Shown here: positions 36,932 to 37,767 of the stretch, one piece after another
How the letters are laid out: every line of letters begins with the position of its first letter
Position numbering within the stretch: position 1 is the first letter of the stretch
From: Penicillus capitatus
Taxonomy: Eukaryota; Plantae; Chlorophyta
Reading direction: 5' to 3'
NCBI GenBank assembly: GCA_965649825.1
Contig: OZ287705.1
Location: 892,314-956,313 of the forward strand
Length of the DNA: 64,000 bases
Made by a program: the position numbers and the translations under genes
The notes under the pieces: model-generated
The model's input: only the letters and a program-made list of their open reading frames with translations
Told to the model about the DNA's origin: nothing
Databases searched by the model: none

Positions 36932-37767
36932 TTATTGATATTGCCATGGCGGCTGCGGCTGGGATTGATATTGCCATGGCGGCTGCGGCTGGGATTGATA
37001 TTGCCATGGCGGCTGGGGTTGGTAAGGAGGGCCAATTGTTATATACTGCGGTCTTTGAATATGAAAGAGAAGGTCAGGACCGAACGTAATACTCTCTGCC
37101 TGCTGAACATGACAAGTCTGGATGTGATTGGCTGGCATTCCAGGCTGCATGGGAACGAGTCCTGATTGACTACGGCATTGCAGCTTTCCTTTGCACAAAC
37201 AAATAATTCTCTTAGCTATCATGTCTCATTCACATACTTACCCTGAGAGTTGTTGCCGGACTCACTCCTGAAAACTATTGCTTTCGTCTGCTCTCTCTTC
37301 TCGTCGCTGTTGGCAGACTTCGATTCAGTCGTATATTCCAGACATTCGGGATATGTTCGGAGTTTATCTTTGAGAGAATCGATTTCCTTCTGCTGCCTGC
37401 TTGAGAGAGCAAAAGAGCCCGCGCCCAACACCGCCAGGGCTCCAATGAGTCTCGTCGTGGCTTTTCTGAGCCTCGATGCGACGTTCAAATTCCGTAACGT
37501 ATGGGACCCAAAAGGCATTTGTTTTATTCTTGAAACTTCTTTGTCCGCAGACTTCAAAGCGTCGACGACATGGTCAAGGGATGTTTTAAGTTCCTCGTCT
37601 CGCAAATTACTTTTTGCGAGACCATTAAGAACAGGCTTCGTTTGCTCTGCCAGCTCTTGTAGCATCTTGAGGTCTTCGCAATTAAAACGGCTCTGGGTCA
37701 CTTTCCTTGCAATTGCAGTGACGATGGCAAGTCCAGCGGATGCCAATGAGCCTATAGTGACCTCCAT
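36932..37767 (-). CDS. Small MLKL/HeLo-like four-helix-bundle protein with two RHIM-like motifs and PQPPWQYQSQ repeats
   Basis: ATG 37767 (MEVTIGSLASAGLAIV); N-terminus aligns with the U-box neighbour. An intron near 37190-37242 joins an exon encoding HVQQAESITFGP, HIQRPQYITIGP and three PQPPWQYQ repeats. Confidence 0.7.
36934..37022. repeat. 30-bp coding tandem repeat x3
   Basis: ATTGATATTGCCATGGCGGCTGCGGCTGGG at 36934 and 36964, degenerate at 36994. Confidence 0.92.

What the first reader, a model, noticed from the sequence alone, without database searches (positions are those of the whole stretch)
36932..37767. Candidate amyloid-activated cell-death executor: MLKL/HeLo-like domain + twin RHIM-like motifs
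Seen: a ~260-aa two-exon protein. Its N-terminus aligns with the neighbouring U-box protein (KVTQSRFNCEDLKMLQELAEQTKPVL vs KAAQVKANQEDCRLLARFAQRIRPVL) and starts with a hydrophobic helix (MEVTIGSLASAGLAIV). The C-terminus has two pseudo-repeats 16 aa apart, HVQQAESITFGP and HIQRPQYITIGP (37028-37111), followed by Q/P/Y/W-rich repeats. Known: RHIM cores read (I/V)Q(I/V/L)G preceded by a hydrophobic residue six positions earlier (RIPK1 IYNSTGIQIG). Fungal HET-S/HELLP fuse a membrane-disrupting helical domain to an amyloid motif (two pseudo-repeats in HET-S) templated by an NLR. Inference: the same architecture (pore-forming 4HB + prion-forming tail) in a green alga. The cores are ITFG/ITIG rather than canonical IQIG, and I found no matching motif in the NACHT gene here.
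Basis: partly seen in the sequence, partly recalled or inferred. Interest (0 to 1): 0.85.

Follow-up and report, generated by a model that had tools for sequence, protein, structure and literature searches.

The report
Algal MLKL-like protein with repeat tail
A green-alga gene encodes a small relative of the membrane-attacking head of the cell-death protein MLKL, joined to a fast-changing glutamine/proline-rich repeat tail. The proposed RHIM-like amyloid switch in that tail is not supported, because the same gene in two sister genomes lacks it.

Summary
The sequence features are real. On the minus strand, exon 1 (37767-37242) encodes a four-helix bundle. A profile of its 33-member family matches the human and mouse MLKL executioner domain (E 3e-8), and 20 of 45 relatives hit Pfam MLKL_N. 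The host is a green alga near Bryopsidales.

The two-exon model is plausible. GTAAGT opens a 53-nt intron of typical length for this genome, and the donor, branch-like block and AAG acceptor recur in two syntenic sister-genome loci. In both species the frame after the acceptor is the only open one.

The twin H-x-Q-x4-I-T-(F/I)-G-P repeat is statistically non-random (shuffle P 0.0017). It lacks the G-phi-Q-phi-G core of RHIM/PP motifs and hits no Pfam family. Nothing else in the window matches it, including the NACHT-HEAT gene 31 kb away. The orthologs lack it: their tails carry 12-15 copies of QTYQPPMQP(S/A).

What is shared is an uncharged, AlphaFold-disordered Q/P/aromatic tail built of 30-bp repeats whose copy number varies (3, 11.8, 14.9).

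The gene evolves about tenfold faster at the protein level than its neighbours (dN 0.34 vs 0.035-0.072). The closest analogue is plant RPW8/HR, not HET-S. Amyloid function remains untested.

The parts
37360..37767 (-). Exon 1, residues 1-136: MLKL_N-type four-helix bundle plus a fifth 'brace-like' helix, with a hydrophobic first helix.
   Evidence: AlphaFold2 gives pLDDT 83 and pTM 0.79, with helices 5-25, 31-51, 58-82, 91-116 and 123-136. The top five Foldseek PDB hits are MLKL executioner domains, TM 0.47-0.54, E 0.055-0.14. The family profile matches human/mouse MLKL at E 3e-8 to 4e-6. 20 of 45 relatives hit PF22215.
37242..37359 (-). Exon 1, residues 137-175: charged, disordered linker. 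The orthologs carry a 27-bp x9-11 (AQEREKERK)n repeat here.
   Evidence: pLDDT 25-36. The region cannot be aligned with L012 apart from its last ~12 codons.
37189..37241 (-). Putative 53-nt intron, phase 1: GTAAGT donor, CTAA branch-like block, T-rich tract, AAAG acceptor.
   Evidence: Coordinates. Four LIAS introns defined by homology are 47-56 nt long, and a window-wide survey of candidate introns peaks at 45-60 nt. The donor GTAAGTA, the 15-nt block AGACATGATAGCTAA and the TTTGTG(C)AAAG acceptor recur in L012 and L013, where the intron is 55 nt and has the same phase.
36932..37188 (-). Putative exon 2, residues 176-260 plus stop: uncharged Q/P/aromatic-rich tail.
   Evidence: This is the only frame open from the acceptor to the repeat, and the best of three by codon score (+1.78). 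The score is inconclusive against non-coding controls. The same holds in L012 (+3.2 vs -8.7 and -6.2). AlphaFold2 gives pLDDT below 45 throughout.
37028..37111 (-). Twin pseudo-repeat HVQQAESITFGP / (DLLF) / HIQRPQYITIGP, residues 202-229.
   Evidence: Coordinates. Shuffle P is 0.0017. DNA identity is only 21/36, split 6/10/5 by codon position, and 4 of the 6 shared residues use different synonymous codons. A neutral-mutation simulation gives P 6e-4, with the frame and segment chosen after the fact. The motif is absent from the orthologs.
36934..37022 (-). 30-bp x3.0 tandem repeat encoding (S)QPQPPWQYQ.
   Evidence: TRF reports 96% matches. A related 30-bp array encoding QTYQPPMQP(S/A) has 11.8 copies in L012 and 14.9 in L013.
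33491..35782 (-). Tandem paralogue: 763-aa protein with an MLKL_N domain, a coiled coil, a U-box and an unknown C-terminal domain. It gives context and is not a conserved partner.
   Evidence: U-box E 1.2e-9. N-domain paralogy. The gene is absent from the syntenic interval of L012 and L013, which is 3.8 kb against 7.1 kb here.

Best explanation
This is a small, fast-evolving member of the MLKL_N / RPW8 / HeLo superfamily of four-helix-bundle proteins, in a siphonous-type green alga near Bryopsidales. Its layout parallels plant RPW8/HR proteins: a hydrophobic first helix, a four-helix bundle with a brace-like helix, and a repeat-based C-terminal region whose copy number changes between genomes. 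Most likely a second exon adds an uncharged, disordered Q/P/aromatic-rich tail.

Inferred mechanism: the bundle is the working part. It associates with membranes and perturbs them once the protein is clustered, as in MLKL, RPW8 and CC domains. The low-complexity tail, together with the ER/K helix repeats in the sister genomes, sets self-association or partner binding, and so the threshold for activation.

The twin I-T-x-G-P unit is a lineage-specific local duplication inside this repeat-prone exon. It is not a conserved RHIM-type signalling motif.

Shown: the fold and homology, the paralogy, the repeats, the synteny, the rate of evolution, and the absence of the motif from the orthologs. Inferred: splicing, membrane activity and the regulatory role of the tail.
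For: Homology and fold:
- The profile of 33 family N-domains hits human/mouse MLKL 4HB at E 3e-8 to 4e-6.
- 20 of 45 relatives match PF22215 MLKL_N, 6 match MCAfunc and 2 match RPW8.
- The AlphaFold2 model has pLDDT 83, and its five best PDB matches are MLKL executioner domains.
- Relatives fuse the same domain to a U-box (21 of 45), ankyrin repeats, or a kinase.

Orthologs:
- L012 and L013 lie between the same flanking genes and contain an intact gene of 452 and 464 aa.
- 75 of 140 N-domain residues are identical.
- The family's nearly invariant positions N29, L36 and L47 are retained in the ortholog sequence.

Splicing:
- The GTAAGT donor in phase 1, the CTAA block and the AAG acceptor are present in both species.
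- Intron lengths of 53 and 55 nt are typical for this genome.
- The resulting frame is the only open one in both species and has a positive codon score.

Tail and rate of evolution:
- Tail composition is shared: Q 24-26%, P 19-28%, aromatic 12%, charged 2-5%. It is predicted disordered.
- Repeat numbers differ even between L012 and L013. This parallels RPW8/HR, where repeat number controls activity (PMC6684095).
- dN is 0.34 and omega 0.71, against dN 0.035-0.072 and omega 0.10-0.18 for five neighbouring genes. This is as expected for a conflict or immune-type gene.
Against: - There is no transcript evidence. AAG is a less favoured acceptor: all four homology-defined LIAS introns end in TAG. 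A TAG 19 nt further on would shift the frame.
- The intron as a whole is about 74% identical between species by my count on the alignment. That is about what the neighbours' synonymous-site divergence would give (pS 0.25-0.30), so conservation of the splice signals is consistent with splicing but not significant alone.
- The codon score of exon 2 sits at about the 10th percentile of coding windows. About 10% of best-of-three scores from non-coding-like windows reach it.
- Omega of 0.71 is not statistically below 1 for this one pair, so relaxed constraint is not excluded.
- The candidate itself does not reach any Pfam threshold; its only hit is Rx_N at E 0.0087.
- Function is inferred wholly from homology. 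No MLKL_N protein from a chlorophyte alga came up in my literature searches as functionally tested.
Confidence: 0.5

Rival explanations
1. This is a HET-S/HELLP-like executor whose C-terminal twin motif forms an amyloid templated by an NLR or other sensor. The fold transition releases the bundle to attack membranes.
For: - The architecture has the right order: hydrophobic helix, bundle, disordered linker, then two adjacent pseudo-repeats.
- The pseudo-repeat is non-random (P 0.0017). It is more conserved at protein than at DNA level, which suggests constraint on the peptide.
- The tail is uncharged and rich in Q and aromatic residues.
- Whether amyloid signalling extends to plants is stated as an open question (PMC7889193).
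Against: - The G-phi-Q-phi-G core is absent, and the tail has no Pfam hit at E 10.
- Nothing else in the window matches the motif. The NACHT-HEAT gene is 31 kb away and shows no such N-terminus.
- The neighbouring genes are a U-box paralogue and a large gene with no domain match that has a K/R/S-rich stretch. Neither is an NLR.
- The orthologs lack the motif entirely.
- A metagenome scan found no related twin motif.
- None of the 45 relatives has such a tail.
- Each unit ends in G-P, and the following repeats are about 40% proline.
Confidence: 0.08
2. There is no second exon. The protein is the 182-aa bundle-only product that the gene caller reported. The 'tail' is a translated view of a 3'-UTR or intergenic minisatellite region.
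For: - The only existing gene call is unspliced.
- All three frames are open through the 30-bp arrays.
- The codon score is inconclusive.
- The exon 2 sequence cannot be aligned between species outside the repeat.
- The stop position differs: relative to L012 the window has 17-nt and 12-nt gaps, which are not multiples of three.
- The acceptor is AAG rather than the TAG/CAG usual in this genome.
Against: - A perfect GTAAGT lies 1 codon (L012/L013) or 7 codons (window) before the read-through stop, in the same phase in both species.
- The intron has typical length and a branch-like block followed by a T-tract.
- The stretch between acceptor and repeat (55 codons here, 21 in L012) is open only in the predicted frame, with a positive codon score.
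- The codon-position pattern of the twin motif favours translation.
Confidence: 0.25
3. The gene is a decaying or functionless duplicate of an MLKL_N-U-box gene's N-terminal exon, drifting neutrally.
For: - Omega is 0.71, not significantly below 1.
- dN roughly equals the neighbours' dS.
- The linker and tail turn over by indels and repeat slippage.
Against: - The gene is present and intact at the syntenic site in three genomes at a neutral-site divergence (dS) of about 0.3-0.5.
- The U-box paralogue is missing from the sister loci, so this gene is the older resident.
- The family's nearly invariant residues are kept, and the fold is predicted with confidence.
- The start-codon context and the 350 bases upstream contain several perfectly conserved blocks of 13-29 nt.
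Confidence: 0.1
4. It is a non-lethal adaptor or decoy. The bundle hetero-oligomerises with MLKL_N-U-box, -kinase or -ankyrin paralogues to tune them. The proline-rich tail recruits partners through polyproline-binding domains, or acts as a cross-linkable structural segment.
For: - The family has many multi-domain members in the same lineage.
- The tail is proline-rich, uncharged and disordered.
- The relative's tail weakly resembles Extensin_1 (E 0.002, below cut-off).
Against: - No canonical PPxY or class I/II SH3 motif recurs in both species, judging by inspection of the sequences.
- The partner U-box gene is not conserved at the locus.
- This explanation rests on inference alone.
Confidence: 0.07

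Closest known systems
Arabidopsis RPW8/HR proteins (non-NLR resistance proteins; PMC6684095)
   Same: Both are small proteins of the green lineage. Both have a putative N-terminal membrane helix and an MLKL/HeLo-like helical bundle. Both carry uninterrupted C-terminal tandem repeats made by intragenic duplication, with copy number varying between alleles or genomes. The ER/K nonapeptide repeats of the L012/L013 orthologs resemble the charged, helix-forming RPW8.1/HR4 repeats.
   Different: The candidate does not hit Pfam RPW8, and only 2 of 45 relatives do. Its terminal repeats are Q/P/aromatic-rich and disordered rather than helical. No genetic link to an NLR is known. The host is a chlorophyte alga, not an angiosperm.
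MLKL N-terminal executioner domain (four-helix bundle plus brace; PDB 6ZVO, 2MSV, 6D74) and plant MLKLs
   Same: There is sequence-profile homology (E 3e-8), and MLKL gives the best structural matches. Relatives of the candidate include true bundle-plus-kinase genes (P0045; P0025 in L009).
   Different: The candidate has no pseudokinase domain, so RIPK3-type phosphorylation control cannot apply. It has a repeat tail instead.
Fungal HET-S, HELLF and HELLP (HeLo/HELL domain plus a prion-forming C-terminus, paired with an adjacent NLR)
   Same: The order of parts matches: bundle, flexible linker, short C-terminal pseudo-repeats. The bundle superfamily is shared.
   Different: No adjacent NLR carries a matching N-terminal motif. 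The motif is not conserved in orthologs. There is no spacer loop between the repeats. The sequences are rich in proline.
RHIM (RIPK1/RIPK3/ZBP1/TRIF) and the fungal PP motif
   Same: Both are short hydrophobic-polar-hydrophobic-Gly tetrads in an uncharged context.
   Different: The core here is I-T-(F/I)-G preceded by S or Y. The central Q and the leading G of G-phi-Q-phi-G are both missing. There is no Pfam RHIM hit.
MLKL_N-U-box E3 ligases of green algae and plants (for example P0022 from Caulerpa lentillifera, P0042 from Trifolium repens, and the neighbour at 33491-35782)
   Same: They share the same N-terminal domain family. This is the commonest architecture among relatives (21 of 45).
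   Different: The candidate has lost, or never had, the coiled coil, the U-box and the C-terminal domain.

Membership tests
MLKL_N (Pfam PF22215) / four-helix-bundle executioner domain | Direct match of the protein to the Pfam model above its gathering score. | tested here: not met
   The candidate has no MLKL_N hit at E up to 1; its only hit is Rx_N at E 0.0087, below cut-off. The L012 ortholog also has none.
MLKL_N (Pfam PF22215) / four-helix-bundle executioner domain | Profile-level homology to bona fide MLKL bundles. | tested here: met
   The profile of 33 N-domains, including the candidate, hits human/mouse MLKL chains at E 3e-8 to 4e-6. 20 of 45 family members hit PF22215, best E 1.4e-12.
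MLKL_N (Pfam PF22215) / four-helix-bundle executioner domain | Four-helix bundle followed by a brace helix. | tested here: met
   The AlphaFold2 model has pLDDT 83 with four long helices and a fifth. The top five PDB matches are MLKL executioner domains with TM 0.47-0.54, but E is only 0.055-0.14.
MLKL_N (Pfam PF22215) / four-helix-bundle executioner domain | Membrane binding or permeabilisation and cell killing on oligomerisation. | not testable with these tools
   Needs expression and liposome or cell assays.
RHIM / fungal PP amyloid motif | Core G-(I/V)-Q-(I/V)-G, or the (I/V)-Q-(I/V/L)-G tetrad. | tested here: not met
   The cores read S-I-T-F-G and Y-I-T-I-G. The definition is taken from PMC7885112. 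No Pfam hit for the tail at E 10.
RHIM / fungal PP amyloid motif | Motif conserved in orthologs. | tested here: not met
   The L012 and L013 orthologs have no such motif. None of the 45 relatives has one.
HET-S/HELLP-type NLR-amyloid signalling pair | HeLo/HELL-superfamily bundle at the N-terminus of the effector. | tested here: met
   Met through MLKL_N homology. The HeLo and HELL Pfam models themselves were not hit.
HET-S/HELLP-type NLR-amyloid signalling pair | The same motif at the N-terminus of an NLR encoded by the adjacent gene. | tested here: not met
   The adjacent genes are not NLRs. The only NACHT gene (3012-6602) is 31 kb away and has no matching motif. A phmmer search with the tail against all six-frame segments of the window found only the tail itself. 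The rest of the 274-kb contig could not be read.
HET-S/HELLP-type NLR-amyloid signalling pair | The C-terminal region forms a self-propagating amyloid. | not testable with these tools
   AlphaFold2 gives pLDDT 25-42 for residues 140-260, which says nothing either way.
RPW8/HR-like small bundle proteins | RPW8 domain (PF05659). | tested here: inconclusive
   The candidate has no hit. 2 of 45 relatives hit RPW8, best E 2.1e-7.
RPW8/HR-like small bundle proteins | N-terminal hydrophobic helix, plus C-terminal tandem repeats with copy-number variation. | tested here: met
   Helix hydrophobicity. The 30-bp array has 3.0, 11.8 and 14.9 copies, and the 27-bp array 0, 11.1 and 9.2 copies.
RPW8/HR-like small bundle proteins | Genetic or physical interaction with an NLR; a role in immunity. 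| not testable with these tools
   There are no genetics for this uncultured alga.

The most novel reading that the evidence does not exclude
The uncharged Q/P/aromatic repeat tail, with or without the lineage-specific I-T-x-G-P units, is a prion-like self-templating or condensing switch that activates an MLKL-type bundle in a green alga. That would be the first amyloid- or prion-like cell-death trigger in the plant lineage. It would evolve by repeat expansion, and allele-specific tails would act as a self/non-self or pathogen-sensing determinant.
Probability: 0.08. Interest if true: 0.85.

Novelty: new variant of a known kind. Interest (0 to 1): 0.4.

Why it matters
[quoted passage not shown] How they are switched on differs by lineage, and whether amyloid-type switching exists in the green lineage is an open question (PMC7889193).

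This locus shows that a chlorophyte alga near Bryopsidales keeps a small bundle-only member whose C-terminus is built from rapidly turning-over repeats. At the protein level it evolves roughly five to ten times faster than its neighbours. This is the RPW8/HR pattern seen far outside the flowering plants.

The locus gives a concrete and cheap test case (three natural tail variants) for asking what such repeat tails do. It also corrects the more exciting RHIM reading.

Tried and rejected
- Word-indexed homology searches with the candidate and with the U-box neighbour returned only themselves. The apparent orphan status came partly from gene calling: in the sister genomes the ortholog was missed in favour of an antisense ORF.
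- A codon-usage test of exon 2 was inconclusive.
- An automatic survey of GT..AG pairs gave many ambiguous solutions. I used it only for the intron-length mode of 45-60 nt.
- A metagenome scan for the twin I-T-(F/I)-G-P motif at fixed spacing gave six hits. All were perfect tandem repeats in unrelated DNA (GC 26-66%) with no MLKL_N domain nearby.
- AlphaFold2 of the full-length protein says nothing about the tail.
I did not pursue it; 90%-identity cluster members of the window's own proteins gave the syntenic loci instead.
- The gene upstream of the closest U-box relative (L002) is unrelated to the candidate.
- I considered the idea that the G/P/I-rich peptide 'HVTIPGIG...VIPGIG', in an ORF at 38947-39210, is a partner motif. 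I rejected it: the similarity is weak, and phmmer found nothing.

Full report
**What is there**

The gene lies on the minus strand. An ORF starts at ATG 37767 and runs to 37242. A perfect GTAAGT follows at 37241, and read-through stops seven codons later. The source is an ENA metagenome assembly: ERZ25074695, contig ctg340175, 274 kb. Its prokaryote-style gene caller reported only the unspliced 182-aa product, P0001.

Downstream in-frame acceptors lie at 37189 (AAAG|G, 53-nt intron, 260 aa), 37162 (80 nt, 251 aa) and 37132 (110 nt, 241 aa). A TAG at 37170 and a CAG at 37145 would shift the frame.

- The N-terminus aligns with the neighbouring U-box protein (33491-35782, minus strand) at 27% identity over 133 residues, pairwise E 7e-16.
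- The first helix is unusually hydrophobic: Kyte-Doolittle 1.6, second of 33 relatives.
- HVQQAESITFGP (37111-37076) and HIQRPQYITIGP (37063-37028) are 16 residues apart. Their BLOSUM62 score of 38 is reached by 0.17% of shuffles of the tail.
- The Q/P/W/Y repeats are a 30-bp x3.0 tandem repeat, 96% identical.

**The organism is a green alga**

The WDR3 gene (57031-59649) is 92% identical to a protein on a 757-kb ENA contig and 52% to a EukProt protein. Its best named hit is Bryopsis sp. at 47%; land plants and other green algae follow. One family member, P0022, comes from Caulerpa lentillifera.

Four introns of the LIAS gene, defined by homology, are 47-56 nt long and end in TAG. A survey of candidate introns across the window peaks at 45-60 nt.

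**The N-terminal domain is MLKL-like**

- Pfam gives only a sub-threshold Rx_N hit for the candidate itself.
- An exhaustive profile search found 45 relatives. Of these, 21 carry a U-box, 20 hit PF22215 MLKL_N, 6 hit MCAfunc, 6 have ankyrin repeats and 2 hit RPW8. Two are the first exons of bundle-plus-kinase genes.
- A profile of 33 N-domains matches human and mouse MLKL chains in the PDB at E 3e-8 to 4e-6.
- AlphaFold2 predicts four long helices and a fifth, with pLDDT 83 and pTM 0.79. The five best PDB matches are MLKL executioner domains, with TM 0.47-0.54 and weak E of 0.055-0.14.

**Orthologs settle most questions**

The window's 421-aa upstream gene has members at 90% identity or more on two contigs of another sample. 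Their loci, L012 and L013, are syntenic with the window.

Between the same flanking genes lies an ortholog that the gene caller missed. It shares 75 of 140 residues in the bundle. The U-box paralogue is absent there: the interval is 3.8 kb against 7.1 kb here.

The donor GTAAGTA in phase 1, a 15-nt block AGACATGATAGCTAA and the T-tract plus TTTGTG(C)AAAG acceptor are all present, giving a 55-nt intron. In both species the stretch between acceptor and repeat is open only in the frame this splice predicts. That stretch is 55 codons here and 21 in L012. Its codon score is positive: +1.8 for the window stretch (+2.5 for the twin-motif part alone) and +3.2 in L012. The other frames score -4 to -16, and most contain stops.

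Taken alone these signals are not significant. The intron is about 74% identical overall by my count on the alignment, close to what synonymous-site divergence would give. The exon 2 codon score overlaps that of non-coding windows.

**The tail**

The orthologous tails read PTLNQLMLPETQYAMMAAACS, then QTYQPPMQP(S/A) repeated 11.8 times in L012 and 14.9 times in L013, then a short P/Q/F end. They contain no I-T-x-G-P.

The orthologs also carry 11.1 and 9.2 copies of a 27-bp repeat encoding AQEREKERK between bundle and intron. The window lacks this repeat.

Three things are shared:
- composition: Q 24-26%, P 19-28%, aromatic 12%, charged 2-5%;
- the 30-bp repeat period;
- predicted disorder, with pLDDT 25-42 for residues 140-260.

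The twin motif therefore looks like a local 48-bp duplication within a repeat-prone exon. It is better conserved as protein than as DNA. DNA identity is 21/36. Identity by codon position is 6/10/5, and four of the six shared residues use different codons. A neutral-mutation simulation gives P 6e-4, although the frame and segment were chosen after the fact. This hints at translation and some constraint in this lineage.

**Why it is not RHIM or HET-S-like by membership**

- RHIM and PP motifs share a G-phi-Q-phi-G core (PMC7885112). Here the cores are S-I-T-F-G and Y-I-T-I-G.
- The tail hits no Pfam family at E 10.
- Fungal and bacterial amyloid signalling is defined by the same motif on an NLR encoded next door (PMC7889193). 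Here the neighbours are a U-box paralogue and a large K/R/S-rich gene. The one NACHT-HEAT gene is 31 kb away. No six-frame segment of the window resembles the tail.
- A metagenome scan for the twin motif returned only unrelated tandem repeats.

**Rate of evolution**

The bundle has dS 0.48, dN 0.34 and omega 0.71. Five neighbouring genes have dS 0.30-0.39, dN 0.035-0.072 and omega 0.10-0.18. DNA identity is about 85% between the neighbouring gene call and the candidate's ATG. It falls to 71% in the bundle, and the linker and tail cannot be aligned.

This island of fast change, with the reading frame kept in three genomes, fits a conflict or immune-type gene. With only one species pair, relaxed constraint cannot be excluded.

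**Best reading**

This is an RPW8/HR-like small MLKL_N protein. It has a hydrophobic first helix and a bundle as the membrane-acting part. Its variable repeat tail sets self-association or partner binding.

In RPW8/HR, uninterrupted C-terminal repeats of varying number control activity, and their likeness to HET-S repeats has been noted but never shown to be amyloid (PMC6684095). The same caution applies here. The high proline content of the conserved part of the tail argues for a polyproline-like or disordered state rather than cross-beta.

The amyloid-switch reading keeps a probability of about 0.08, pending fibril and propagation assays.

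Noticed in passing
window 3012-6602 (+), with likely upstream exons at 1745-2605 and 2683-3018: A NACHT-HEAT NLR-like gene. The NACHT domain hits at E 2e-13, and there are more than ten very regular ~38-aa HEAT units sharing the string 'AAPQHAGE.LP.L'. High repeat-to-repeat identity is typical of fast-diversifying NLR sensor domains. 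The N-terminal exons have no Pfam match.
   Followed up: partly
window 33491-35782 (-): An MLKL_N-coiled coil-U-box protein with an unannotated ~450-aa C-terminal domain that it shares with relatives such as P0003. The whole gene is missing from the syntenic interval of the sister genomes L012 and L013, so it is a presence/absence difference.
   Followed up: partly
L012 13556-13855 and L013 13557-13804: The orthologs carry a 27-bp tandem repeat encoding (AQEREKERK)n. It resembles an ER/K single alpha-helix and lies between bundle and intron. L012 has 11.1 copies and L013 has 9.2. The window gene has only a possible single remnant, 'DEKREQTK'.
   Followed up: partly
L012 12713-13327 (-) and L013 12714-13328 (-): The source's gene caller chose a 204-aa antisense ORF over the real MLKL_N gene. 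This is why protein-database searches made the candidate look like an orphan.
   Followed up: yes
window 61981-62796 (-): A metacaspase-type Peptidase_C14 domain (E 7e-20). It is conserved at the same place in the sister locus L011. This is another cell-death-related gene on the contig.
   Followed up: partly
window ~870-1002 and ~1530-1663 (+): A direct DNA duplication. The same ~42-aa peptide, 'GQLSTFVQLPRDASNVTSTRIKTEHYLSEQSFKLYAFVVNPS', appears in two ORFs about 660 bp apart, upstream of the NLR gene.
   Followed up: no
window 37768-39363 (-): This stretch has no gene call, yet it is 85% identical to L012 with perfect blocks of up to 56 nt. It contains at least one well-supported 55-nt intron (38368-38314). 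It most likely holds the 3' exons of the large upstream gene (about 44755 to 38119), which has a K/R/S-rich region and no Pfam domain.
   Followed up: partly
window 30696-32279 (+): The lipoyl synthase gene is split by at least four introns of 47-56 nt. Donors are GTACAA, GTATCC, GTATCT and GTGCGA, and every acceptor is TAG. This is a useful calibration set for gene models in this genome.
   Followed up: yes
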